Assembly: GCF_006345805.1 (NCBI RefSeq)
Contig: NC_043001.1
Span: 79,112,001-79,176,000 of the forward strand
Reading direction: 5' to 3'
Origin: Octopus sinensis
Taxonomy: Eukaryota
Length of the DNA: 64,000 bases
Both the position numbers and the translations under genes were made by a program. Of the stretch, positions 4,111 through 55,990 are shown piece after piece (positions within the stretch are counted from its first letter, which is position 1; each line of letters starts with the position of its first letter). Under the pieces are notes generated by a model. It had not been told where the DNA came from and did not search any database. It was given only the letters and a program-made list of their open reading frames with translations.

Positions 4111-5676
4111 ACGGAGATGGACTTGCATAGCATGTGACTTGATCTGAGATCGTGTGCTGGAACGAAAACAATTGCAGCGTGGAAGGTGTTTGTAAGCCAT
4201 TTAAGAAACACACAAAAGCCGTTCGATTCACTTCAACTTTAAGTTTAAGTTGTCAAAATATTTCCGTCGCTATAAGACCGTGACCTGTTCACTGACAAAA
4301 ATCCATGCTGCATCTGAGAAAGTAACAGTTAGTTCGACATATATATGTACGTATGTATGTGTGTATGTATGTATACACGCATGTATGCATGCATGCATGT
4401 ATGTATGTATGAACGTACATACGCCTGTGTGTATGTATGTATGTATGTATGTATGTATGTATATATGTATGTATGTGTGTGTATATGCACGCACATACAC
4501 ACTATAAACTTAAAGCTATAAACCTGTAGTGATGGATAGATGTAGACTGACCACTCATCACAACAATATCAAATTTCAACCTCCCCCGCCGAAACTAGAA
4601 GTGATTTACGACCCTCACCCCCAAAACAAAACTCTCTAAAACCTATTATCAGACATTTATCTCTATATCACAAAACTGTTTTACTATTACTCATCTTTTT
4701 ATTTCTTTTTAACTTTTTTTCTCCCTTACATCTAGTTAGTTCAGGTTAAATATACATACGTATGTATGTATGTATGTATGTATGTGTGTATGCACGTACG
4801 TACGCATGTGCGTATGTATGTATACGCGCACGTACGCATGTGCCCATGTGTTTGTGCGTACATGTACGTGAGTATGTACGTGTGTATGTCCATACGTAGG
4901 TATGTATGTTTGTACTTATGTGCTATGTATGTATGTGAGTATCTAGGAGAATGGGCAGGCACGTCTGTGTGTGTGTGTCCATGTGTATGTGCATGTGAAC
5001 GTATGTCCGTGTACTGGTATGTGTCCGTCCAAGTTGTGTACATGACTGTTACTTTGTTGAAGGTTGTATATATACACACATATATGTTTGTATAGACGCA
5101 CACACCTATATATATGTGTGGGTGTGTGTTTGTTGCTCTCATCATCGTCTAACTGTGAATGGATACAACGTTTAGGTGCAACAGTGCTCATATAACCATA
5201 TACATATACACAAGTACACACAATCATATAGACACACTCATAAATATACATATAATCTTAAATTATGTACCCATATATTCTTATCCACTTCTACATACAT
5301 ATGTCCTATTACACACATACACACATACACATATACACACGCGCACACACAAACGCACACACACACGCACAAACATACTTACGCACACACACGCACACAT
5401 ACATGCAAAATACGACACAGTATACAAGGGCAACGGTTAAAAATCGAACATGGATTATATTTTATATATGCATAAACGCATACATATACAATACATCCAT
5501 ACATCCATACATGCTCATATGTGCATGCATGTGCATTTTTTATAGCACCACAAATGCACATACGTATCAAACAAGGTACGCTCATACAGTTATATATAAC
5601 TGCACATAAGTGTTTTAGCACCACGCATTGCAACATGTACGTAAGGATTACATGTAAACGAGAGAAAGAGGGGTGG

Positions 5677-6106
5677 TTATAGAATGGTCCTCCTGAATGG
5701 GATCTGGATGTTACTCCATTCGGATTTTCGGTTGAGAGTAGGTTTGTATTCTTGTATACAAACAGCTTCTGTGACCTGTCTCAACATTGCATCGGTGGGA
5801 TGTGTTGATAAGATGTTTAACTTAAGTTTCCCTAGGGATCCCTTGTGGCAGTCTACAGCATGTTGGTAGAAGATGGAGTTTGGCTTCCTTTCAATGAAGT
5901 TGTCCAGGTGTTCTTTGAACCTATCATTGATACTCCTAGAAGTCTCACCTATGTATGACTCTGGTTTAGTCGCGCAAGCTCCTTCTTGGCACTCAATTTG
6001 GTATACAGTGCCCTTAGTCTTGCAGTTCACATGTGGGTTTGTCGAACATACTGCACAATTACTTTGACACAATTACTTTGAAATGGATATGATCTGCATA
6101 ACGCCG
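5677..6106 (-). pseudogene. Penelope-like element 3' fragment encoding a GIY-YIG endonuclease
   Basis: ORF 5677-6072 has C..C...NC...VYQIEC...YIGETSRSINDRFKEH...RQVTEAVCI...LNRKSEW. Upstream LCRSYPF is reached across a 14-nt tandem duplication. Same family as the element at 26090-27722. Confidence 0.9.
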
Positions 6107-7159
6107 TAGAAAAGACAGGTAGGACTATCAAATCGGCGTTATGCAGATCATATCCATTTGATGTCTATATTAAATGTCTATATTAAATTTAATATAGAAA
6201 ACAAACCGTTTACCTATATTCGAATGCCCATCATGTATCTTATATTATTCACACATGATTTTTGACTTTCGCGCCAATTAGAAAAGTTATTAATTCTGAT
6301 ATAGAGGAAAAACAAAATTAGGTCATGCGAATGGCAATGTTTTTGATACTCTCTACTTTTAAATATATTTGAAGTCATCTTTTAAGTAATTATATGGTTT
6401 CTAGGAAAGTTACAGGGCTCTATTGTTGCAACGTAGATAACAAGTATGACACATATTAAATTTGATAAACGTCATACATATTTTCATTACACCGCTTCAT
6501 TGCTCTGCTTACAGACTAAAATTGTAATGTGCGCTTTACATGACGGATACTTTTTTTCTGAAGATCTTAGTTTAATGGATTTTCTTTCCTAAAACAAATT
6601 GTACTAATTATTATTTGCATAAATGTGAATTTATAATTTGTGTAGAGAAGATGAAGTTTTCGAAGCATTTGTTCATAGTTATCCTTTTCCACTTTGGTTT
6701 TCGAAGGCAACTCACCCTTGTGCTTGCCCAATTTTTCGTCTTTTCTGTATTATAGTATGTGTGCGTATGTACGTTTTATTTTTCTCTTTTTAATTTAGTG
6801 ATAACTTTGACCGAACAATTGCTTCGTTGCAATGTTTTGCATGAAAGCATTTATTTCGTTTATCAGCTTTTAAAATATTAAGGAGACCATGCAGAATTGT
6901 ATAATCTCAGTTACCATTATTAATTGTAGCATATGAATTAATGGGCAGCATTCTCTCTCCAAGAATCCAAGTTCAACGATATTTTACTCCATGTGGTTTA
7001 GTACGTATCGTCTCGCTCCAATAACAATAGATATTTGGTGCTGGCGAATATAAATGGTCCATGGACGGTTTACTTCTGTATTTTCTAGAGGGCAGCTGAT
7101 TTAAAATACCAACATACTGTTTCCCGTGGTCCCTATGTCTCTATGTGTGTCTGTATGTA

Positions 7160-7575
7160 CGAGGTAGGTGCTAAAACATTTCCTGGCTTTAAGGGTATCG
7201 CAAAAGGCTTAGTTGGAAGCACAATCTTCCCCGTTTTTATACAGGGCTTAGAAAAAGTTTGAGTTAAAAGAGTTTCCTATGTTTCCTCGGTGTTTGTAAA
7301 TATGTAGTAGAGGCGGTGTGTTAGTTGAGCTGTCGATTTATACACCGTAGCATCTTTTCACATACATGGGCGAGCCGAAATGTTCCTGGCTTTGAATGAA
7401 AGAAAATACGGGAAGATCAGTTAATTATGATTTTATTCAACATATTCCTCTCTCAGAGTCACACATATTGCTGCAATCCTTCAGTTTTTCTAATCCCTGA
7501 AAAACCACTCGGACGTTTGGGCCTGCGACAAGGTCTTTGATGACACTCTTAAAAGGCCAGGAACTTTTCACCACT
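7160..7575. mobile_element. Mariner-derived MITE: partial forward copy (~7160-7258) and a reverse copy (~7372-7575)
   Basis: TA|CGAGG..GGTGCTAAAA..TTCCTGGCTTT terminus and the reciprocal AGGCCAGGAACTTTTCACCAC. The interior resembles a decayed mariner C-terminus (G L.KL..R..KC....G.YVE). Confidence 0.6.
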
Positions 7576-7880
7576 TTATCATAAGAATCTTAAATGAAGC
7601 AATTTTGAAATGTCTTCCTAATCTTCTTTGTGCCACTAACAGATTAGATTTGGAGAATTCGCGATAATCTCTTATGCTCTCTCTGCGCGAAATCGAGTAC
7701 ATAATGCACATATGATCATAAGTACAGATGAGATATTATATCTATGGTACAAGAGCTTTAAGTTTCGCACGAATTCTTTGTAAATAAGTATATGTGCACG
7801 TGTGTGTGTTTGTATATGTACATGTTCGTGTATGTGCTTACCGTTCTATATATGTTAGTCTTTTACACGGGTACGTGTAT

Positions 7881-8075
7881 ACTCTTTTACTCTTTTACTT
7901 GTTTCAGTCATTTGACTGTGGCCATGCTGGAGCACCGCCTTTAGTCGAGCCAATCGACCCCAAGACTTATTCTTTGTAAGTCTAGCACTTCTTTTGGCGA
8001 ACTGTTTACAGGGACGTAAACACACCAGCATCGTTTGTCAAGCGATGTTGGGTGGACAAACGCACACACACACAT

Positions 8076-8112
<37 letters not shown>

Positions 8113-8270
8113 CATATACATATACATATATACGACGGGTTTCTTTCAGTTTCCATCTACCAAATCCGCTCACAAGGCTTTGGTCGGCCCGTGGCTGTAG
8201 TGGAAGACACCCCGCAGTAGGACTGAACCTGGAACCATGTGGTTGGTAAGCAAACTACTTACCACACAGC
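7881..8270 (-). mobile_element. SINE family B copy
   Basis: Tail ACTCTTTTACTCTTTTACTTGTTTCAGTCATTTGACTGTGGCCATGCTGGAGCACCGCC, internal (CA)n(TA)n tract, tRNA-like head. Confidence 0.85.
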
Positions 8271-8836
8271 CTGTGTACGTATGCGATAATACGTACCTTT
8301 CTATATATATTTGCCTTTTACACACAAACTTTTCTTTAGCTAACAATGGATGGGTTTCTAATTAATATACATCATGATTTCGTAGAAATTAAAACAAACA
8401 CAACAGAACAACATCAAAGAGAGTCTCAAACTTGTGTCGATTTAAATATTCAATTTCCTGAGAACTAATTAATCTATGTAGCGCTATACTAATTTTCGTA
8501 TTTTTGGTTTCCCTTTATGATCTGTTTCTTATTACCGTCTTTTTTTTTCTGTATTATCATAAATTCTTCATCTCAAGGTTATTGCGTAAGAAAATGCTTA
8601 ACGTTATTAAGTGCAACAATAGAAATCCATAGAAAGTTTTAAACTGCAATCACTCTGACACAGTCTTCAGGGTTAGAAGTAATAAGTCGATACATCCTTT
8701 ACTGATTTCAAGTGAGATTTTAACAATACCCAGCAGATAATTTTAGCAACATTCCATAAAGTTTTCTTTTGAAATAACGAGGGCAGTTATTTTCATGGCC
8801 CTTTCGCAAAAATGTCATATAGCAATATATATATAT

Positions 8837-26089: not shown

Positions 26090-27722
26090 TGCATAATAGG
26101 TAGAAAGGGTGTAATGTTCCTATACACATCCATTGATCTTTATTTTGCTGTGGAAAAATGTGTGGAGGCGATGAGCGCGAGTGATGTGGCTTTTCTTAGT
26201 GTCGACACTGAAGAACTAGATCTCCTCCTGAGACTGACATGCGAAAATGAGTACTTAGATAAACATGACCTTAGTTGTTTCTGCCCCATTAGATCAGTAA
26301 GAGGTAGAAAGCCCACTATAACTTCTATACTCCGCCCAAAGGGAGATGGAACGGGTGGACCAGAATTATGCGAACCCCCGAAAATAGTGTTCAGGTTAAA
26401 AGGATGGGCTTGGTACTCGCGTGTACCAAGAACACACTCGAAGTCCATATATTTACGTTTAATAGCAAGATACACCTTCCAAGAGGAAGGTGCAGACGTA
26501 GGTGTGAGTATTGCCGACGATGTGGCATGGTGGATAGGAGACTTAAAGAGAAGTTAGCAGAGAACTCCATTAACCTAACCATGAACTCCCGCTACGTGGA
26601 CGATATGAACACAGCAACCAGAGCATTCCTACAAGGCAATGTTGATGATCTCGAAACTAACACCATGGAGAGCATTTAGCAAATATCTATCTCCATCTAC
26701 CGGAGTATAGAAATAACGATAGACTACCCTAGTAAGCACCCTAACTCTTGATTACCCGTTTTACACACTGATCTCTGGCTAGAAACGAAGAACGATAAGG
26801 TTCAGATCCTTCATTCTCATTATGCCAAACCCATGGCCTCTAAGTAGCCTGTTCAAAAGAACGCAGTGATTGTGGACAACGCTAACTTCAACATTCTGAT
26901 AGCTGACTTGATGAGAGTGATGAGGAATGTGTCTCGCATGTGCAGCCCTATGGAATTGGAAAGAAACACACAACACTTCATCCGCCGCATGCAGTTCTCT
27001 GGCTACAACAAAAGAAACAGGATTAGAGTGTACAAAGGAGCCAGGACTAAGTACAAAGCCATCATAGACATTGATGCTAAGGTGATCTGCCCGCTGCACA
27101 GGAGCAGATCCTAGAAGAGCACAGAAAAGACCAGTGATAAGATAAATAAAGTCAACACTTGGTATGACAACAAATCATAGCAGGGTGTCATGTTCGTTGA
27201 TGCTACCCCTGGCGGCGAACTAGGAGACCTTTTAAGAAAAACATTAAGGCTAATCTATGAATTAAAGTAGTGGAGGGGTCTGGTGCCCCTTTAAAATCAC
27301 TGATCTGCAATACCTATCCCTTTGATAAGTCTCCCTGTGCGGAGTACAATTCTGTTGTATGTAAGATGAACCCATAGGTTAACTGTATGGTTACAAATGT
27401 AGTGTATAGCTTACGATGTACTGAGGGACGATGCAGAAATATGAGAACTACCTACCTTGGAGAAACTGCACGCAGCTTAGGAGATCGTATTGGTGGATAT
27501 TGGCGAGAGCTCAAAGAAGAGAAAAGCTCGTCAATGTTCTGCCAACATGCTCAGGTAGAACATGGAAGCTCGATTAATAGCATAGATGTTAAAGTACTAT
27601 TGACACATAGAACTGACACAACACGTAGACAGATTATAGAAGCTACACACTTAACTGTAGACAGATGGAGTTTCAATAGAAAACATGAATGGAAGAGTAA
27701 CACCCACCACCACACCACATGA
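26090..27722 (+). pseudogene. Penelope-like element (RT plus GIY-YIG), 5'-truncated and decayed
   Basis: IIG..V.FLYTSID, FQEEGADVGVSIA, RYVDDMN (RT catalytic motif), ADLMRVMRNVSRMC, NCMVTNVVYSLRC..YLGETARSLGDRI...RRQIIEA...NRKHEW. Confidence 0.9.
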
Positions 27723-37848: not shown

Positions 37849-37951
37849 TCACTACAATCGTTTCGACACCTCGTTCACTTGTGCCTCAAGTTTGAGATGC
37901 TGTACGAACAGTTTTACTGCCTCATAGTTGTGGATGTCTCTCATCAGGTGA
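37849..37951 (-). ncRNA. Type I hammerhead ribozyme candidate
   Basis: Minus strand reads TCAC-CTGATGA-(GA)GACATC...GGTGTC-GAAA-CGATTG-TA-GTGA. Stem I has 4 bp, stem II has 6 bp, and the cleavage triplet is GUA. Confidence 0.65.
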
Positions 37952-39159: not shown

Positions 39160-42100
39160 TTACAGATTTATGCTTAAAATAGTGTCGTCTTTCATACTGA
39201 CCATTTTTGCCACTTTTACCCACTTTTTATTAAAACATTCGTTCGATAAAGCCTCCCTCTCTATTCTCATCCTCCTTTTCAAGTGGTACTTGAAAAAGTT
39301 GACGAGAGACTGACCAGAGAGGAAGGTGTTTGTTTGCAGTCCTTTCAAACGTGTCCATCACACATTCTTTCGCCATAGCCATCAGCGTAACGAAAACCGT
39401 TTTCCCTTCCCGTTTAAAGGAAGGTGGTGGAACAATACTCACGATAGACTCGGACGATAGGCGAGCCCGACCTACACGTGACAACAGCTGTTCGACGAAG
39501 GACCACAGCTCTGAAATATCTGGACACTGCACGAGTGCGTGCAGAACGGCTTCGTCGCTCTGACCGCATCTCGAGCAGGTCGGTCCGGTGATGGTTTTCG
39601 AACCGTGTCTGTAGCTCTTCTCTCGAACAGGTAGTGCGTCTCGATAGCACTGCCAAGCCAGGGATTTCTGGAAGTTATCCATAGGCCCCGGCCCGAACAT
39701 GGTCCTGAACAGGCGGGTTAGGAATTTCTCGTCGACGCCCAGGTTTGCCCCGAGTGTGTCGTCGGACCTCCCCTCCACTAGTCCTCTATAGAACGCTTTA
39801 GTCGTTTGTAAGTTGCACAAGTTTAACCCCGGTCGGCAGAGCTTCTGTAGAGCTTGGCGACACTCTCGGTGCCAATCGCCCAGTTTCGGTCTCTTTTTGA
39901 TCCACGTTTGCAGTTCGGTCAGTGAGACGAGCTGCGGGAAGTCGCGCCTCACAAACGGCGCCCACACCTGTTCACCGTCGTTGACGAAGTTCCAGAGATG
40001 TCGCAGTCTCAGCGCATGTCTGCGCATCATCAACCACGGCATGCCCAGTCCTCCATTCAACGGATGTTGACAGCAAATGGACTTCCTCACCATCGGAACG
40101 CCACCCTTCCACAGGAAGCGGAAGAGTATGCGTTCCAGTTTGTTGATGGTGGCGTCGGGACAAGGTACGACGGTCAGGCGGTAATCGATGACGGATGCGA
40201 TGTACGCGTTCGCCACCTCCGCCCGGCCTTTTAGAGACAGCTTTCTCTCGGCCCATGTTTGGCTGAGAGCGACCACTCTACTCGTGATCTCGTCCCAGTT
40301 CTTATCCATTTGGAGGTCCGGACTGAACCAGACCCCGAGCAATTTAACCGGTCCGTCCGTCCAGCGTCCCACTACTGAGCCGCAGTCGGACGGCATGGGC
40401 TTGCTTCTCCAGGTGCCGAGTAGCAAACCCACTGACTTTTCCGGGTTAATCTTTGCTCCCGTCACCGCTTCGTATTTTCTTAGTGTCTCGCCTATCATCT
40501 GGATGTGTTTGTCGCTCGACACTATGACGGTGACATCGTCCGCATATGCCGACACGCTCGTCCCGCAACCCAGTTCCCGTGGGATGCCCCTCAGTGTCGC
40601 CAGCTTCCGCAGTAGCGGCTCGAGAGTCAATACATACAGAAGCGCCGACAGGGGACACCCCTGACGGACCGAACGCGTGATGTCAAACGGTTTCGACAGG
40701 TGACCGTTCACCCGAATCACCGATCGGATGCCGCTATACAAGGCAGCGATCCAACCGCGGAAGATGGGACCGAAGCCAGCCGCCCTGAGGACGGCCGCTA
40801 AGGACCGATGGTCGACCCGATCGAAGGCTTTAGACTGATCCAAATTTATCAGCGCCCCACCCATGCCAGGATCCTTAACTACCCTGTCCACAATGTAGCG
40901 CATCAGATGGAGGTTGTCATGTATGGTTCTGCCCGGCACGGCGCATGTTTGCGCCTTGTCAACTAGTTTCTTGATGACAAGCGCCAACCCCTCGGCTAGC
41001 ACCTTGGCCAAAATTTTCAAATCTGCGTTGAGCAGAGTGATGGGCCTGAAATTATCTATGACGTCCCCCTTGTTTGGGTCTTTCTTAATCAGTGCCACTG
41101 CTCCTCGCTTTACAAAAGCAGGGATACTCCCGTTTTGCTGCGAGTTGCAGTAGACAGCTGCCAAGAGGCCTCCAAACAAGTCTGGCATATGACAATAAAT
41201 TTAGTAGGGCAGACCATTGAAGCCTGGTGACTTGTCTCTCGCGCAGGCCTCCATCGCATCCTGTACGTCCGCAGCTGTGATAGGCCTTTCACAAGTCTAC
41301 ACCTCTCTTGCTGAGAGTCGTGGAAAGGCATGCAGGTAGGCACTAAAGTCTACTCTGCGTTCTGACCCACCGCTTGACCCAAACAGTTGGGTGAAGTGTT
41401 GTTGAAAAGCCCCACACATCCTTTTAGGCTCGAGCAATTCGGGCACCTGTTCATCTGTAAGAGACTTGATGGTGGCTCTGTTGCCTCGTTGCGTCTCCAC
41501 CACTCGGGCCTCTTGGGCGGCTCCAACTCCTTCGTTATTCAGAGCACGCATCCTGGCTCTGACAACGCATCCTTCGTGTTTGGCGCTGAGGTGTTGGTCG
41601 AGGGCCAATCTCGCTGCCAGTACGTTGGACGCGATGCCAGTTCTAAGTGCCTCTTCTAAAACCTTAACTAAGTCTCCCTCTATTCTATTTCGGTCTAATG
41701 CTAGGGCTTTACTGTATCTGACTGATTCTGCTTTAATTGCTTTTTTTTAGGGCATACCACCATCTGTTGTTGATGATGGTACCCGTCAAAGCTCTCTTAA
41801 CTAATGTGCTGATCCGGTCTCTGTAAACCTGTCGTCCTGTAAAAGACGCGTTCAGTTTCCAGTAACCAGGACCCTGCCTATGTGTCTTATCTAAGTCAAG
41901 TGTACAAGTCACAAACTTGTGAACTGTGTAACTGACTATATGAAATTGTGGACAACCTACACTATTTTTATCTATTGTCCTACAGAATACTCTATCTAAG
42001 TATGATCTGGACGACCCGATACGGTTCCTCCATGTCCACATTGGCACATTCGGGTGGTCCAGTCGGTACCTGTCAGACAGTTGGAAACGTCTGAGCAGGT

Positions 42101-42599
42101 CTTTGAGGCATTTGCATCCCCTTCTATTGCTATCTCTGCCCACGTAGTCTAGATGCGTGTCCAGGGTGGCATTCCAATCCCCCACTAAAAGTAAAGGACG
42201 AGACGTTCCCATGAAAGACTCTAGACGTCGAAAGAAATCTGGTCGGCCTGTTAAGGACGGTGCATAAACTGTTATCAGTCGAAAAGCACACTCATTGCTG
42301 CCATCGACATCCAAAACGACCAGCCTACCCTCCGGGTCTAGGAAAATTGCTCTTACTTTGAGGTCCAGACTCTTCCGGAGAAGCACCGCGGTGCCACCTC
42401 CGCCCATTCTCGGTAGACATGGAGAAAAATAAATGTTGAAATGTGTGCCGAACATGTGCTGGAGTGCCCACGAGCTGTGGAGTTTGGTCTCACTGATGGC
42501 TATGATATGCAGATTTAGTGACTTGATATCATTTAACAGGTAGCCTTGTTTCCAAGGCGACCCCAAGCCACGTACATTTATACTGCCTATTTTGAGCAT
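39160..42599 (-). pseudogene. Tx1 ORF2: APE endonuclease, reverse transcriptase and C-terminal zinc finger (~1,146 aa when reconstructed)
   Basis: IGSINVRGL, ISETK, LVGDWNA, SYLDR (APE); KSPG.NGLPY*IY, FRPITLLNADLKILAK, LDQSKAFDRV, VRQGCPLS, AYADD (RT); CSRC...H...C. Lesions: +1 in the A8 run at 41741-41748, TAG at 41297-41299, TAA at 41201-41203, and a frameshift near 39358. Confidence 0.93.
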
Positions 42600-42665
42600 G
42601 TTCCTATAAAAAATTGTTTTACACACGAAAAGAAAGTGCAAAAAAAGAAAGAGAGAGAGAAAAGG

Positions 42666-45380: not shown

Positions 45381-47466
45381 TAAGCTGATCGTTTTATAGA
45401 AGTTTTTATTATTAATAATTTCAAATCCAGACATTCAATATTGATTACTATGTCGAAACGCGGGATGTACCAGGATAAATTTGAGCTTCAATGGAATGCT
45501 TGTTTTAAATGAAATCTTTACACCAAATTAAATAGCTTTAATAATTGGTTTTGAAGAATCATTTTCCAACTTGTAGAGTAGTTTATGAGCAAATAAAGTT
45601 ATCTCGTTTCTCATATGTCTCGAGTTTGTCTGAAACATTTTATAAACATGAATGGTGCTCCAGCATGACCACATGGCTGAAACGAGTAAAGGAGTAAAAG
45701 AGTAAATTAGAAAAGATGTATTGCATCTTTGGCAAAACTCAGATATATTGTTTTTTGGTTTCTTTTCACCGCCTGCCTATATTTAATCACAGTTTAGCAT
45801 ATAGTGTTGGAGATAATTGCAATGATTTTTAATTAGATGGATGGACAGGAATACATATTACTTATTATGAGATTTACATATAAAGTTTATGTTAATGTTA
45901 GTGTGTTTGTTAATAAGAAGGTGTAACTGAAAAGCAATTAGCTGTGATAAAGTTCTTGGCAATTTATATTTATTATACCAGGCCGCAAGCTGGGAGAATC
46001 GTTAGCACACCGGGTACAATGCTTAGCGACACTTCGTCTGTTCTGAATTCAAATTCTAGTCGTGGTCGACTTTGCTTTCGTCCAACTGGAATCGATAAAG
46101 TAAGTGCCAGTTCGCTGAAGAGGCCACTGCATAAGTGACGAAAGAACTTTGACAAAGAAAATAAAAATAATTGTAATAAAACTAAAATGAAGATCAAATG
46201 AATAGTGCGAGTGGTTAATTGGCAAATGATGATGACTCCCAAGTATAATATTTATTTCAACACACGGTTTCACATCAAGAATCTTGCAGCGCAATTGTAT
46301 AAATGTAATATCTTACATCAGTTACTTGTTAATTTCTTGGATTGCAGTCATGCTGGAGCACCGACTTAAGGGATCTTGTCGAACAAATATTCCTCAGGTG
46401 CGGTACTTATACAAGCAGACTCTTTACGAGAACTGAAATTTACCGGGACGTAAGCGGACTTACACCAGTTGTCAAACAATAGTGTGGTTAAACACAAAGA
46501 CACATACACACAGATACTCACATACGCATGCACAAAATACGATTATATACATGGCAGACTTCTACACAGCTTTCGTCTACCAAATTCACTCACACAGCAT
46601 TAGTTGCTTCTCGGCTACAGTAAATCAACCCAAAGCACGTAATTTGCTTTGCTTTGCTTTGTCTTAATATATCCAAACTTTGCTGTGCTTTGCTTTGTCT
46701 TAATGTATCGAAACCAATCTATGTATGTCACAAAATATTTATTCGCTTAAACATTGTGTCATGTATACCTAGGATACGTAGAATATCTCTGTTATTCCTG
46801 CCGCGGGACTCATTATTGCCGATGAATGACCTTCACATGACTGAGTTTTCGTTCCAGACAAAAAGGTAGCGTTATTCAATCGCGCATAATATGCCTCCTA
46901 CGAGCTGAAATAGACGTGTCCTTTGTGCTCACAAATCTTTAGCCATCTAATGTTGAGTTAAACTTAAAATTTTATATTTATAGGAATTTTTTGCGTAATA
47001 AGATAAAAATCCAAGGCTGTGTAGATATTAGAGCATTTATAGATAGAAAGTCTTACAGCTGATTTTAGGATATTAAATCCCTTCATCGGAGACGGTGCGG
47101 TATGAGAGTATAGTTACGTCATAGTTAGCTTAGATGTGATACAAAATAAAGAGTGAGGTGGAGGAAATAATATAAATGCAAGATATGTATGGGTATTGAA
47201 GTTGTAAGTCCATTTCTTAGGCATAATGGTATATATGTAAAATTCCAATATCCTATGAGTAAAGTCCAAAAGTCCAACAGAGTTTAAAATGAGTCCTTCC
47301 AAATATAGAGTTTATAAGCAATGTAAGATTCCCTTATGAGTGAGAATCAGCAGATTTTTAAACTTGGTCATTAGAGTTTATATACAGTGTTGCAGAGTCA
47401 AAGGTTTTTATTTAAATAATATATATGTCTGTATGTGTATATATACATATATATACATACACATAC

Positions 47467-50946: not shown

Positions 50947-51112
50947 TATATATGTAGTATAATTTTTCTGAATCTTCAGATTTTTGAATATGCTAAACCA
51001 CTGATTTTAAATTGATATTAATCAAATTAATATTCAATTTTTCACCCTTATTATGTTATATTTCTATATCTATCTATGTATCTATCAATCTATCTATCTA
51101 TCTATCTCTCTC

Positions 51113-51181
<69 letters not shown>

Positions 51182-51264
51182 TCATCTATCTATCTATCTG
51201 TCTGTCTATCTATATATATATATATAAATATATGAAAGAATGGAGTTGAACGACGAATTAACAA

Positions 51265-51367
51265 AATTCCTTTATTTTCGACATATGTTTCGAAGGCTGC
51301 ATATTCCTAATTGCGAAGAAATAAGGAGTATATTATGCCGCTTTCTCATCAGGAAATGCAAGGAACT
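51265..51367 (-). ncRNA. Type I hammerhead ribozyme (inverted pLTR copy)
   Basis: Reverse complement of the copy at 53227-53329, with an intact core. Confidence 0.8.
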
Positions 51368-51394
51368 TATGTCAACATCAAGATGCACAAAAAA

Positions 51395-51941
51395 GCGGAA
51401 TTTTATAATACCGCCCTGTCAAAAGCCGGTTATAGGAATAAGGTATCATATATCGCCCCGGCCCATTCTAAACTAATATTTACCTCTCAGGATAAGAAAA
51501 CTGATAACAATAGAAATAATGTAATTACTGATTTCAACCCTAGCAACGTCGACACTAATATAATTAACAAAAATAATGTACGGACCAGGGGAGGCAATCG
51601 AAAACCAACACCAATTCTACAACACAGAAATACTCCCTTTAATGTAAATGTTAGCACTCTGAGCTATTCTAAGTCCAAAAAAAACTATATCTGGTTTGTC
51701 ATTCCTTTCGGGAAACAAATCAGGTCTAACCTCCCTTTACAATTCCGTGAAGCCGTAGCTAGGAACTTTCCCAGGAATTCTAGGTATTACTCTACCATCA
51801 ATTCGCATAAGGTGAGGATTGCATTTTCCAACCCTAGAAACGAAACCTATCGCAGTTAATTGCCTCCCATAATAATACGCTGTTAAATAAGGATTCATCA
51901 CCCAGGAGTAGCGACACTGCCCTTACCAATTCCAACCTAAC

Positions 51942-52001
<60 letters not shown>

Positions 52002-52656
52002 GATAAACAGTATTGATATTAGCAACATTCATAGCAGCACTGGCGTTAACAATAGTAATAATGATAATAATATTAGCCAGATTATTAACAGTGGTGGTGT
52101 TAGTGGTAATAATAACAGCATTTCTAATAACAGTTGTAAAATTGATGATAACAGTCCCAGCATTCCTATAGTCAGAGAAATTGCCGACGATATTACAATT
52201 AATAGTAATGATAATAAGATGAATAGTATCGTGGCCAATGCTAGCAACATTAAAGTTCTAGCAACTATTAAAGTTTCTATCCAAAAATTCCAAAATTAGA
52301 AACACCATTTACCAGTGCAAAATTTCTTCGAGAACCGATGTCTTCTTCTACATTGGAGCAACTTCTTCTAAATTAGCCCAAACCATTACTCAACTTTCAG
52401 AGATAAGAGAAAACAACACAGCACGGAACTAAGTAAATTAGTTTGGCGTCTGAAGGACAGCAATACAACTTTTAAACTGGAATGGTCTATATTGTCGGTA
52501 TCCTTCCCGTTTGGCAAGGGCAGAAAACATTGCGGCGTCTGTAATTCCGAACTTTTCCATATTTTGTTCGCCAAAGTCCCTTTAATAAATACAATCATCG
52601 AGAGGTCCTACAGATGCATGTGCTGGCAAAAACACACCTTCCAATCATATGAATAA
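51395..52656 (+). pseudogene. PLE ORF 3' part (thumb, Asn-rich linker, GIY-YIG), frameshifted
   Basis: FYNTALSKAGY, KKNYIWFVIPFGKQIRSN...NFP...INSHKVRIAFS, IYQC..FFYIGAT, HSTELSKLVWRLK...LEWSIL, CGVCNSE and RCMCWQKH. These motifs fit my recollection of Naiad/Chlamys PLEs. Confidence 0.8.
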
Positions 52657-53226
52657 TGATTAATATAGATAGCCCCTTGAATTTTAATTAATATAACTCT
52701 TTTTTATATATTTCACCCCCCCATAGTCAAAAAATTCTTTTTATACTTTCAAAGAACTACTACTCAATCCAGTGAGTATGTGTTACCTTTGTCCCTATAC
52801 CTCGCCCTCTTCTTTTTCTCTCTTTTTCCCTCTATCTATAGTAAGCACATTTAAACACACAGACACAAACCGTTCACCTCAACACTGTCTGTTTTCTGAC
52901 ACCCACCCATCCACAAACACAATCACGCACACACATACACACACACACATTTATGCCGTTATATACAGTCACACACACAGACACTCACTCACAAAAGAAA
53001 ATTCACCATTCATTTGAACTGCACCCTTTCACCTTCCTATTCTTATGCCTCTCTTCTGCTACTTCGTTTGAACCCTTGAACCTTTAGAACCTTCTAGATT
53101 ATTCTACATCAAACCATTTTGACGTCACTCCTTATAAAGGAATTTTTTAAAGAGACACCCATTTTCACTATGGGCTCCGTGTGAGCAGTCATCTAAAAGT
53201 TTTTTGTGCATCTTGATGTTGACATA

Positions 53227-53329
53227 AGTTCCTTGCTTTTCCTGATGAGAAAGCGGCATAATATACTCCTTATTCCTTCGCAATTAGGAATATGCAGCCT
53301 TCGAAACATATGTCGAAAATAAAGGAATT
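53227..53329 (+). ncRNA. Type I hammerhead ribozyme (3' pLTR)
   Basis: CTGATGA at 53242-53248; stem II GAAAGCGGCATA/TATGCAGCCTTC (10 of 12 pairs); GAAA at 53303-53306; palindromic CATATG; TC cleavage site after 53314; stem I of 15 positions with 2 mismatches. Confidence 0.85.
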
Positions 53330-53504
53330 TTGTTAATTCGTTGTTCAACTCCGTTCTTTCATATATTTATATTTAAAAAAAAAAACATACAAATTTCCAC
53401 ACGAAAGCACGTAACTTCAAACGTGTCTTCTCTGATGTGAATTTGCTACCCATGGATCGGTTAACCGAATTATCCATAACAAGATAATTCATTCAACTAC
53501 TCAA

Positions 53505-53547: not shown

Positions 53548-53683
53548 TCCGCCGAGGTCGACTTTGCCTTTCATCCTTTCGGGGTCGATAAATTAAGTAC
53601 CAGTTACACACTGGGTCGATATAATCGACTTAATCCGTTTGTTTGTCCTGTCTGTGTTTAGCCCCTTGTGGGTAGTAAAGAAA

Positions 53684-53685
<2 letters not shown>
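53548..53685 (+). mobile_element. 5'-truncated SINE A1 with a probable 11-bp TSD
   Basis: TATATATGTAT at 53537-53547 and 53686-53696. The context is low-complexity, so the TSD is less certain. Confidence 0.8.
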
Positions 53686-55895: not shown

Positions 55896-55990
55896 GTAAT
55901 TTGGTACGATAATTTCGTACCACATCATCTTATTAAATGTTGTAAGTATTACAACAGTTTTAAAATGCTGAGCACTCATCAGCCAATTAC
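55896..55990 (-). ncRNA. Type I hammerhead ribozyme candidate
   Basis: Minus strand reads GTAATTGG-CTGATGA-GTGCT...GGTAC-GAAA-TTATCG-TA-CCAAATTAC. Stem I has 8 bp plus a 1-nt bulge, stem II has 5 bp, and the triplet is GUA. Confidence 0.7.

What the first reader, a model, noticed from the sequence alone, without database searches (positions are those of the whole stretch)
51222..53372. Naiad-type Penelope element bracketed by inverted pLTRs, each carrying an intact hammerhead ribozyme with an extended stem II
Seen: the last 173 bp of the element (53200-53372) recur inverted at its truncated 5' end (51222-51394) with only 4 mismatches. Each copy folds as a type I hammerhead: full CUGAUGA/GAAA/UC core, palindromic CAUAUG loop III, 12-bp stem II with a further UUCCU/AGGAA hairpin, and a long stem I. 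Known: PLE pLTRs carry hammerheads with minimal palindromic stem III thought to act as dimers, and inverted pLTR arrangements are typical of Penelope. Inference: a fairly recent insertion whose two ribozymes would cut transcripts of both strands. The 173-bp inverted repeat could also form dsRNA in a host pre-mRNA, a possible ADAR substrate in a coleoid.
Basis: partly seen in the sequence, partly recalled or inferred. Interest (0 to 1): 0.8.

Follow-up and report, generated by a model that had tools for sequence, protein, structure and literature searches.

The report
Dead octopus Penelope element, long-stemmed hammerheads
This is a dead, front-truncated copy of a Penelope-like jumping gene of the 'Hydra' clade (not 'Naiad'), bracketed by an inverted copy of its own tail end; both ends carry a hammerhead ribozyme motif whose second stem is unusually long, a design that a second, distantly related octopus family also keeps.

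Summary
51222-51394 is the reverse complement of 53200-53372 (173 nt, 4 mismatches). Each arm carries a complete type-I hammerhead core (CUGAUGA / GAAA / UC, palindromic CAUAUG stem III, cleavage after 53314).

The element is not Naiad-type. An almost intact relative in Octopus sinensis (L001) has the order RT, linker, GIY-YIG, 3' UTR, hammerhead arm. The protein family shows every diagnostic of the C-terminal-EN 'Hydra' clade of Penelope-like elements. The window copy lacks most of the RT and has at least three frameshifts, so it is dead. It also runs on past 53372 into an optional 132-bp tail, ending at (AT)n.

The interesting part is the ribozyme. Helix II is a 12-position stem (10 pairs plus A.C and G.A) with a side hairpin, 54 nt in all, against 4-8 bp in known animal and PLE hammerheads. 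Cnidarian relatives have the normal short form. A second, highly diverged octopus Hydra-type remnant keeps the same design in different sequence, giving 12 compensatory pairs.

Rfam does not detect the motif, and catalysis is untested. Overall this is a known kind of element carrying a probably undescribed hammerhead variant. Interest is moderate.

The parts
51212..51225 (.). (TA)n at the end of a (TATC)n array: upstream target microsatellite
   Evidence: Sequence. TRF finds a TATC array at 51067-51225. Hydra-clade PLEs insert into (TA)n (PMC8557442).
51222..51394 (-). Inverted copy of the tail-less 3' end (inverted pLTR arm). It carries a hammerhead motif on the minus strand: CUGAUGA at 51352-51346, with C17 at 51280.
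   Evidence: 173 nt with 4 mismatches to the reverse complement of 53200-53372. The covariance model scores it 140.7 bits. An A.A mismatch in stem I at 51357 lowers the ribozyme fold to -16.9 kcal/mol.
51394..51395 (+). Junction between the inverted arm and the 5'-truncated body, with a short microhomology (GCA.AAA)
   Evidence: Alignment of the junction with the intact L001 ORF and with the inner flank of the 3' arm.
51395..51900 (+). Decayed ORF, from the post-RT region into the linker (AEFYNTALSKAGY ... KKNYIWFVIPFGKQ ... NLSQLIASHNNTLLNK). The frame shifts near 51845-51860.
   Evidence: Translations. 59% identity to P0001. tblastn with the L001 protein gives 85% over 51686-51841. The copy starts at about residue 393 of the L001 ORF.
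51900..52290 (+). Asn-rich low-complexity stretch, including (ATA)19 at 51944-52001 and an 18-bp tandem duplication at 52241-52275. It replaces the CxCX5C linker found in other members of the clade and contains a stop and a frameshift.
   Evidence: TRF, translations, and the gap opposite CNCxxxxxCPL in alignment A2.
52290..52656 (+). GIY-YIG endonuclease remnant (IYQCK...YIGATSSKL / frameshift near 52378 / NHYSTFRDKRKQH...CGVCNSE...N...CMC)
   Evidence: tblastn with L001 gives 61%. In the family, Pfam GIY-YIG matches 10 of 23 members, best E 5e-7. hhalign against a PLE-type GIY-YIG gives E 1e-6.
52657..53199 (+). 3' UTR, partly CA/CT-rich low complexity
   Evidence: Sequence. BLASTN colinear with L003.
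53200..53372 (+). 3' arm (pLTR segment) with the sense-strand hammerhead. Stem I 53226-53241/53315-53330; CUGAUGA 53242-53248; extended helix II domain 53249-53302, including the hairpin 53273-53277/53286-53290; GAAA 53303-53306; stem III 53306-53313; cleavage after C17 at 53314.
   Evidence: Covariance model 145.3 bits. Covariation.
53373..53504 (+). Optional 3' 'tail' of the element. It is absent from the inverted arm and from relative L003.
   Evidence: Alignment A4. BLASTN to L001 8376-8430 gives 80%, E 1e-8; the inverted match to L001 8470-8504 gives 86%, E 2e-6. The tail concept comes from PMC11167929.
53505..53547 (.). (AT)22: downstream target microsatellite
   Evidence: TRF.

Best explanation
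The locus is a dead, 5'-truncated insertion of a Hydra-clade Penelope-like retroelement (RT followed by a C-terminal GIY-YIG) in a (TA)n microsatellite. It spans about 51222-53504.

How it arose (inferred). The element's protein cut both DNA strands and primed reverse transcription on both. On one strand cDNA synthesis started at the distal site, so that copy includes the 132-bp tail, and it stopped inside the ORF. On the other strand it started at the proximal, tail-less site, equivalent to 53372, and stopped after 173 nt. The two cDNAs were joined at a short microhomology. The result is [inverted 173 bp][truncated body][173 bp][tail].

The ribozyme. The 173-bp segment holds the family's type-I hammerhead. 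It has a canonical core and a minimal palindromic stem III, which implies dimer-dependent folding. Its helix II is extended and branched (54 nt).

Likely function in active elements (inferred). In source elements arranged in tandem, this ribozyme most likely trims multimeric or read-through transcripts at the pLTR. Published in vitro work says cleavage is not needed for insertion itself.

What is shown: the repeat, the homology, the domain order, the clade motifs, the conservation and covariation of the motif, and the energetics. What is inferred: the twin-priming origin, any self-cleavage, and any present-day activity. This particular copy is most likely inert.
For: Repeat.

Domain order and 5' truncation:
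- L001 carries a 667-aa RT ORF, then the linker, then a 161-aa GIY-YIG ORF, then the arm.
- The window copy begins at about residue 393 of that ORF.
- L003 is truncated at a different point.

PLE identity:
- An AlphaFold model of family member P0009 (pLDDT 90.8) matches TERT best (3du5_A, E 1.4e-8).
- The EN is GIY-YIG.

Hydra clade:
- RWK, DKT, CxCX5C, and CxxC..E..N..CxH with no CCHH, in alignments A2 and A3, compared with the published description.
- 448 relatives of about 700 aa on contigs of about 2.5 kb, including a coral.
- (TA)n on both flanks.

Inverted 3'-end fragments recur. L001 copy 1 has a 42-bp inverted arm end at 100% identity. L001 copy 2 has an inverted tail end. L005 and L006 have inverted pLTRs.

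Mechanistic precedent: a PLE protein cleaves and extends both strands and starts reverse transcription at two sites, which produces an optional tail (PMC11167929).

Hammerhead:
- Core intact in both arms and in L003.
- Chance expectation 0.013 per window.
- 89% of cells paired against 38-52% in slid controls.
- 12 compensatory pairs, reached by 0 of 500 shuffles, once the divergent L003 2391-2529(-) copy is added.
- RNAalifold recovers stems I and II.
- The helix II domain folds as proposed on its own.
Against: - Rfam detects no hammerhead here even at E<=10.
- The ribozyme fold lies 5 kcal/mol above the monomer MFE and makes up about 0.06% of the ensemble. The cnidarian control hammerheads behave the same way.
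- Helix II has two non-canonical pairs.
- G10.1-C11.1 is G.G in L001 and in the divergent L003 copy. That copy also has U4 changed to C.
- Only five sequences from three or four lineages were available, and the 5-sequence alignment was fitted to the model, which biases the pair counts.
- Published PLE hammerheads cleave poorly in vitro and are dispensable for insertion in vitro (PMC4209133, PMC11167929).
- Clade assignment rests on diagnostic motifs, not on a phylogeny with Repbase references.
- The octopus copies lack the CxCX5C cysteines, and the unit is about 3.4 kb rather than under 3 kb.
- The 132-bp tail is much longer than the published 30-40 bp.
Confidence: 0.8

Rival explanations
1. 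Naiad-type PLE: an element with an N-terminal GIY-YIG, whose GIY-YIG is followed by a lost RT.
For: A GIY-YIG domain and a (TA)n target are present. Naiads also prefer (TA)n.
Against: - In the intact relative the RT lies upstream of the GIY-YIG, and the 3' UTR and arm follow the GIY-YIG directly.
- The window ORF begins in the post-RT thumb/linker region, upstream of the EN.
- There is no CCHH motif. The family has RWK and DKT, with CxxC and CxH flanking E and N.
- Naiads lack canonical hammerheads, and cephalopod Naiads are described as old remnants.
Confidence: 0.03
2. A TIR-type DNA transposon or MITE-like element: the 173-bp terminal inverted repeats are transposase substrates, and the GIY-YIG protein is the nuclease.
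For: The inverted repeats are near-perfect at 173 bp, and the interior has no RT.
Against: - Relatives have the same 3' arm but no matching 5' arm. L003 has none, and L001 has only 42 bp.
- The 5' ends differ from copy to copy, as expected of abortive reverse transcription.
- The interior is colinear with the 3' half of an RT-encoding ORF.
- The arm is 3'-UTR sequence, and the copy is asymmetric because the tail is present on one side only.
Confidence: 0.02
3. The hammerhead-like motif is real as sequence but is not a working ribozyme. The long 'helix II' would then be a conserved structured RNA element with another role, such as a recognition or priming site for the RT/EN protein near the RT start sites, and the core would be a decaying relic.
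For: - Helix II is far outside the 4-8 bp range.
- The usual loop-loop tertiary contacts cannot be recognised.
- The ribozyme fold is disfavoured thermodynamically.
- 10.1-11.1 is broken in 2 of 5 copies.
- PLE hammerhead cleavage is weak and dispensable in vitro, and reverse transcription starts close to this region in another PLE.
Against: - All invariant core positions are kept in three of five copies despite 16-25% divergence. The changes seen in L001 within the core fall on the free positions N7 and H17.
- Stem I proximal pairs covary.
- The palindromic stem III is preserved in all copies (CAUAUG, CAUGUG, CAAUUG).
- Cnidarian relatives have an ordinary compact hammerhead at the same position.
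Confidence: 0.3
4. The inverted arm arose after insertion, by a local inverted duplication or an assembly artefact, rather than during integration.
For: Craig et al. note that complex PLE insertions cause assembly problems.
Against: - The same kind of inverted 3'-end fragment is seen at three other independent copies and in cnidarian relatives.
- The arms differ at 4 sites, two derived in each arm relative to L001 and L003. That fits two real copies ageing in parallel rather than a collapsed or duplicated assembly.
- The junction has microhomology.
Confidence: 0.05

Closest known systems
Hydra clade of C-terminal EN+ Penelope-like elements (Craig et al. 2021, PMC8557442)
   Same: Domain order RT then GIY-YIG. 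RWK and DKT motifs. No CCHH. CxxC and CxH flank the catalytic E and N. Inserts into (TA)n. Hammerhead in the pLTR. Partial-tandem and inverted arrangements. Short single-ORF units. Reported hosts include Mollusca.
   Different: The octopus copies have lost the CxCX5C linker cysteines and carry an Asn-rich low-complexity insert in their place. The unit is about 3.4 kb. The hammerhead helix II is 54-76 nt, not a 6-bp stem with a tetraloop as in the cnidarian members I examined (L005, L006). The tail is 132 bp.
PLE minimal type-I hammerheads (Cervera and de la Pena 2014, PMC4209133)
   Same: Located in the pLTR. Type-I topology. CUGANGA/GAAA/UH core. G10.1-C11.1 in the window copies. A 1-2 bp helix III with a palindromic loop, implying dimeric action. 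Helix II longer than in canonical animal hammerheads. The ribozyme fold is not the monomer MFE.
   Different: Helix II has 12 positions plus a branched insert, against 6-8 bp. Helix I is long (5 + 9 bp with an internal loop), against 4-5 bp. There is no unpaired nucleotide between A9 and 10.1.
Naiad/Chlamys N-terminal EN+ PLEs
   Same: PLE family, GIY-YIG, (TA)n preference, pLTRs. Some Naiads have 'HHR_half_core' halves 35-50 nt apart, which resembles the wide spacing seen here.
   Different: Opposite domain order. A CxC domain sits between EN and RT. The EN has CCHH. The RT has an IFD. No canonical hammerhead.
L1 'twin priming' inversions, and the two-strand cleavage and extension shown for the Poseidon PLE of Anolis (Frangieh et al. 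2024, PMC11167929)
   Same: An inverted 5'-truncated segment joined to a 5'-truncated body at a microhomology. Two alternative RT start sites give an optional tail.
   Different: The mechanism has not been demonstrated for this clade, and the tail here is about four times longer.

Membership tests
Penelope-like elements (EN+) | Reverse transcriptase of the TERT-like lineage | tested here: met
   Tested on the family, not on the window copy, which has lost the RT. The L001 ORF has RT motifs (FIQFDIASFYPS, YRDDCLF). The AlphaFold model of P0009 (pLDDT 90.8) has TERT as its top Foldseek PDB hits (3du5_A, E 1.4e-8). Pfam RVT_1 and a PDB sequence profile gave no hit.
Penelope-like elements (EN+) | GIY-YIG endonuclease domain | tested here: met
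   Pfam PF01541 matches 10 of 23 family EN domains, best E 5e-7. The best PDB sequence hit is I-TevI, on the YIG..R..H motif. hhalign against a PLE-type GIY-YIG in the window gives E 1e-6. The window copy keeps IYQC...YIG...NH...E...N, with one frameshift.
Penelope-like elements (EN+) | pLTRs from partial-tandem insertion, often with an inverted 5'-truncated copy upstream | tested here: met
   Window inverted arm. L001 has two copies in succession plus inverted 3'-end fragments. L005 and L006 have direct and inverted pLTRs.
Penelope-like elements (EN+) | Optional 3' tail | tested here: met
   53373-53504 is shared with L001 but absent from L003 and from the inverted arm. At 132 bp it is longer than the published 30-40 bp.
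Hydra clade of PLEs | C-terminal position of the EN | tested here: met
   L001: the RT ORF at 5053-7056 precedes the EN ORF at 7074-7559. All 44 full-length relatives are colinear.
Hydra clade of PLEs | RWK motif, and DKG changed to DKT | tested here: met
   A2 and A3 consensus: RMRWKAFF and ADKT. L001 has SDKTRNTYKL and RIRWLAFF, that is RW-L rather than RWK.
Hydra clade of PLEs | CxCX5C linker motif | tested here: not met
   Present and invariant in non-octopus family members (CNCxxxxxCPL). Absent from the window copy, L001 and P0002, where Asn-rich low complexity takes its place. This could be loss in a sub-lineage or decay; I could not tell which.
Hydra clade of PLEs | EN without CCHH; CxxC before the catalytic E and CxH after the N | tested here: met
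   L001 has CNLCNSE...N...CPH. The window has CGVCNSE...N...CMC, with H replaced by C. The family has these C, C, E, N, C, H columns invariant or nearly invariant.
Hydra clade of PLEs | Short unit (<3 kb) inserted in (TA)n | tested here: inconclusive
   (TA)n flanks are present in the window, L001 and L003. Relatives sit on contigs of about 2.5 kb. The octopus unit, however, is about 3.4 kb (L001 about 4843-8310).
Hydra clade of PLEs | Phylogenetic grouping with Repbase Hydra references | not testable with these tools
   No reference sequences were available, and the paper's supplements are not held.
Naiad clade of PLEs | N-terminal GIY-YIG, then a CxC domain, then the RT | tested here: not met
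   The order is RT, linker, EN.
Naiad clade of PLEs | CCHH motif in the EN; no canonical hammerhead | tested here: not met
   No CCHH. A full hammerhead core is present.
Type-I hammerhead ribozyme | Conserved core: C3 U4 G5 A6 N7 G8 A9, G12 A13 A14, A15.1-U16.1, H17 | tested here: met
   Both window arms and L003 have it exactly. L001 differs only at N7 and H17. The divergent L003 2391-2529(-) copy has U4 changed to C.
Type-I hammerhead ribozyme | G10.1-C11.1 pair | tested here: met
   Met in both window arms and in L003. It is G.G in L001 and in the divergent L003 copy.
Type-I hammerhead ribozyme | Three helices supported by covariation | tested here: met
   Helices I and II have 12 compensatory pairs, reached by 0 of 500 shuffles, with 88.6% of cells paired against 38-48% in slid controls. 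RNAalifold finds 11. Helix III never varies in its pairs. Caveats: only 5 sequences, and the alignment was fitted to the model.
Type-I hammerhead ribozyme | Match to the Rfam hammerhead covariance models | tested here: not met
   No hit at gathering score or at E<=10. The models also missed the compact hammerheads of L005 and L006, so the test has low power for PLE-type motifs.
Type-I hammerhead ribozyme | Helix I / helix II tertiary contacts, and self-cleavage | not testable with these tools
   This needs biochemistry. Energy models place the active fold at 6e-4 of the ensemble, which is similar to the control PLE hammerheads.

The most novel reading that the evidence does not exclude
Octopus Hydra-clade PLEs carry a class of hammerhead that has not been recognised. 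Its two core halves are separated by a long, branched helix II of 54-76 nt, and the design has been conserved by selection across deeply diverged families. Standard descriptors and Rfam models miss such motifs. The 'missing' hammerheads of other PLEs, such as the Naiad 'HHR_half_core' cases, could therefore be of this type. The helix II extension may also serve as a protein-recognition or priming element next to the RT start sites.
Probability: 0.3. Interest if true: 0.5.

Novelty: new variant of a known kind. Interest (0 to 1): 0.35.

Why it matters
As a transposon copy this locus is ordinary: a dead Penelope-like element in a repeat-rich octopus region. It matters in two modest ways.

First, it corrects the classification. 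The element is Hydra-clade, not Naiad, and it documents a cephalopod sub-lineage of that little-studied clade with an altered linker.

Second, it shows that a hammerhead can keep a canonical core while helix II grows to 54-76 nt with a side branch, and that this form is conserved with compensatory changes in two diverged families. Helix II length sets the geometry of the loop-loop contact that makes natural hammerheads fast, so such a variant would be an informative natural test case. It also warns that descriptor and Rfam searches under-count PLE ribozymes.

The copy also gives a clean genomic footprint, with a tail-less inverted arm and a tailed direct arm. That footprint matches the two-strand, two-start-site integration mechanism recently shown in vitro for another PLE clade.

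Tried and rejected
- Rfam at gathering score and at E<=10 found no hammerhead. The only hits were microsatellite look-alikes of mir-297 and similar, which I take as artefacts.
- Pfam on the decayed window translation and on whole family proteins gave nothing useful. Only the trimmed EN domains hit GIY-YIG.
- A PDB sequence profile of the full-length family gave no hit, so I used structure prediction and a fold search instead.
- A strict hammerhead descriptor requiring at least 4 contiguous helix II pairs missed the window motif because of the A.C mismatch. I relaxed the descriptor and calibrated it by simulation.
- A metagenome scan for more arms gave 0 hits.
- An exact look-up of the window's 182-aa ORF found nothing on record. 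The source species and any orthologous locus were therefore not established.
- The hammerhead-like candidate at 37947(-) was rejected. Stem I is only 4 bp, the fold z-score is 0.29, and only microsatellites lie upstream. The candidate at 46115(+) was rejected because it has no stem I.
- The TIR DNA-transposon reading and the post-insertion duplication reading were considered and rejected; see the rival explanations.
- No host gene or exon could be recognised near the element from ORFs, so the intron/ADAR idea could not be examined.
Full report
OBSERVATION

The claimed repeat is exact. Window 51222-51394 is the reverse complement of 53200-53372 over 173 nt, with four mismatches at 51241, 51252, 51319 and 51357 (BLAST E 1.8e-81; the repeat finder I1).

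The 3' arm reads, 5' to 3':
- a long stem I 5' strand;
- CUGAUGA (53242-53248);
- a 54-nt helix II domain (53249-53302);
- GAAA;
- C-AUAU-G;
- U, then C17 (53314);
- the stem I 3' strand.

Three details need correcting:
- The '12-bp' helix II is ten standard pairs plus an A.C and a G.A.
- The 5' arm copy has an A.A in stem I.
- This copy does not end at 53372.

Rfam finds no hammerhead at gathering score or at E<=10. It also failed on the plain hammerheads of related cnidarian elements, so this negative result is weak. A relaxed descriptor that accepts the motif yields 0.013 hits per simulated window, against three hits in the real one.

WHAT THE ELEMENT IS

The interior has no RT. Stitched across frames, it encodes the back half of a protein: 'AEFYNTALSKAGY...KKNYIWFVIPFG...', an Asn-rich low-complexity stretch, and then a GIY-YIG-like domain.

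The only close database relatives are two Octopus sinensis proteins, and their loci are informative. L001 holds a nearly intact copy. A 667-aa ORF carries RT motifs and a DKT motif and runs into the same linker. A 161-aa GIY-YIG ORF follows, then a 3' UTR, then the same hammerhead-bearing arm. The GIY-YIG is therefore C-terminal to the RT, and the window copy starts at about residue 393 of that ORF. L003 is truncated at a different point.

Searching with the L001 protein gave 448 full-length relatives of about 700 aa. Most lie on contigs of about 2.5 kb, and one is from a coral. Their alignment shows RWK, DKT, a CxCX5C linker, no CCHH, and CxxC and CxH flanking the catalytic E and N. That is the motif set Craig et al. 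give for the Hydra clade, together with (TA)n targeting and canonical hammerheads.

Sequence methods could not name the RT. A confident AlphaFold model of a family member (pLDDT 90.8) has telomerase catalytic subunits as its best PDB fold matches, as expected of a PLE. The nuclease is GIY-YIG.

Naiad is excluded. Naiads have the opposite domain order, have CCHH, and lack canonical hammerheads.

One Hydra feature is not met. The octopus copies lack the CxCX5C cysteines and have low-complexity sequence in their place.

ANATOMY AND ORIGIN OF THE INVERTED REPEAT

The 132 bp after the 3' arm (53373-53504) is homologous to the sequence after the arm in L001 and ends at (AT)n. L003 and the window's own inverted arm stop at the position equivalent to 53372, followed by (TA)n. 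There are therefore two alternative 3' termini, which is the 'optional tail' signature of PLEs.

Every copy I could examine has a short inverted piece of its own 3' terminus at its 5' junction:
- 173 bp in the window;
- 42 bp at 100% identity in L001 copy 1;
- about 35-45 bp of tail end in L001 copy 2.

The cnidarian relatives show inverted pLTRs too. The window junction (CACAAAAAA|GCGG) has a short microhomology.

Frangieh et al. showed that a PLE protein cleaves and extends both DNA strands and starts reverse transcription at two internal sites. The simplest account is priming on both strands: the distal start site gave the main cDNA, and the proximal start site gave the short inverted one. 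This account is inferred, not shown.

The arms differ by 2.3%, with two derived changes in each relative to L001 and L003. The ORF has a 5' truncation, at least three frameshifts, and stops. The copy is dead.

THE HAMMERHEAD

Published animal type-I hammerheads have a helix II of about 4 bp. PLE minimal forms have 6-8 bp, with a 1-2 bp palindromic helix III and presumed dimeric action. Cnidarian Hydra-clade relatives fit this range, with CUGAUGA, a 6-bp stem, a tetraloop and GAAA (L005, L006). The octopus arms instead have 54 nt: a 12-position stem, a 12-nt bulge, and a UUCCU/AGGAA hairpin.

Among the four arms, 89% of cells pair against 38-52% in slid controls. Two pairs are compensatory, and two mismatches are 'repaired' in other copies.

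A covariance model built from these arms found a fifth instance at L003 2391-2529(-), with E about 0.005. It lies about 430 nt downstream of a much more diverged Hydra-type linker/EN remnant and just before a microsatellite. Its stems have different sequence but the same layout:
- stem I: UAUCAC/GUGAUU;
- an 11-position helix II with 9 positions paired;
- a 54-nt branched insert;
- a palindromic CAAUUG.

With this copy included, 12 of 33 pairs show compensatory change, a value reached by 0 of 500 shuffles. Six of those pairs are in helix II. RNAalifold recovers stems I and II on its own. Both helix II domains fold as proposed in isolation.

Caveats:
- There are only five sequences, and the alignment was fitted to the model.
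- This fifth copy has U4 changed to C.
- Two copies have G.G at 10.1-11.1.

Energetically, the active fold (-20.6 kcal/mol) lies 5 kcal/mol above the monomer MFE. The control PLE hammerheads are at least as disfavoured, which is consistent with dimer-dependent or assisted folding. I found no description of such a long helix II in PLE hammerheads. Craig et al. do mention Naiad 'half cores' 35-50 nt apart that fit no descriptor.

FUNCTION

In active, tandemly arranged source elements, the ribozyme most plausibly trims multimeric or read-through transcripts at the pLTR. This is inferred from the literature. Cleavage is weak in vitro and is not needed for insertion in vitro.

At this locus a plus-strand transcript spanning both arms would pair them into a 170-bp duplex of -287 kcal/mol. 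That duplex would pre-empt the ribozyme. Only transcripts that contain one arm could fold it.

VERDICT

The element is a known kind: a Hydra-clade PLE, dead and truncated. Its hammerhead appears to be an undescribed long-helix-II variant, conserved across two octopus families. Interest is moderate, at 0.35.

Noticed in passing
window 55905-55982 (minus strand): A third hammerhead-like motif: CUGAUGA, a 59-nt helix II region with an internal hairpin, GAAA, UUAUCG, UA, and an 8-bp stem I (GUAAUUGG/CCAAAUUAC). The chance expectation for such hits is 0.013 per window. There is no PLE coding remnant nearby and no sequence similarity to the arms. Stem III is not palindromic, and a GGUACGA/UCGUACC hairpin competes with the ribozyme fold.
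   Followed up: partly
L003 2391-3760 (minus strand): A second, highly diverged Hydra-type PLE remnant in O. sinensis. Its linker reads VLWFNSIFGSHVSTKIAGKLLDKGFP..., its EN is about 25% identical to the L001 EN, and it carries the long-helix-II hammerhead design (core CCGAUGA). I used it as the independent lineage for the covariation test.
   Followed up: yes
L001 4757-4798, 8300-8520 and 8502-9443: L001 holds two copies in succession. Copy 1 has a 42-bp inverted copy of its own arm end, 100% identical. The 135-bp tail and its inverted end form a palindrome around a (TA)n, just upstream of the ORF start of copy 2.
   Followed up: partly
window 5677-6072 (minus strand): A 131-aa ORF with a canonical GIY-YIG domain (Pfam E 3e-5) of the usual PLE type. 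It is unrelated by BLASTP to the family studied here, but homologous at profile level over the GIY..YIG..R..H half.
   Followed up: partly
window 27387-27722 (plus strand): A 111-aa ORF that looks GIY-YIG-like (VVYSLRC...YLGETARSLGDR...). It has no Pfam hit and may be another PLE remnant.
   Followed up: no
window 39230-42641 (minus strand): A non-LTR retrotransposon: a 652-aa RT ORF (Pfam RVT_1, E 3.5e-31, plus zf-RVT) preceded by a 302-aa ORF that looks like an AP-type endonuclease.
   Followed up: partly
window 53548-53685, with copies at 388, 1123, 1300, 11538, 22675 and elsewhere: A dispersed SINE-like repeat of about 140 bp with at least 10 copies in the window (76-88% identity). One copy abuts the (AT)n that bounds the element.
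   Followed up: partly
L005 5334-5366: The coral locus has an additional compact hammerhead (CUGAAGA, GUGA-GCAA-UCAC, GAAA, CAGGCUUG, UA) about 300 bp beyond the element's own pLTR hammerhead, between (TA)n tracts. It may belong to a retrozyme-like repeat.
   Followed up: no
window 51188-51253; L001 and L003 microsatellites: The Rfam sub-threshold 'mir-297', 'mir-3149' and 'mir-1277' hits all fall on (TA)n/(TG)n microsatellites. I take them as artefacts of low-complexity sequence.
   Followed up: yes
L004 and L007 (Logan contigs ERR12716832 and ERR12716959): These are the closest non-octopus relatives (P0003 and P0004, 34-42% identity). P0003 also has an Asn-rich insert before the CxC linker, but both keep the cysteines. 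The contigs end before any hammerhead could be seen, and the source organisms are unknown.
   Followed up: no
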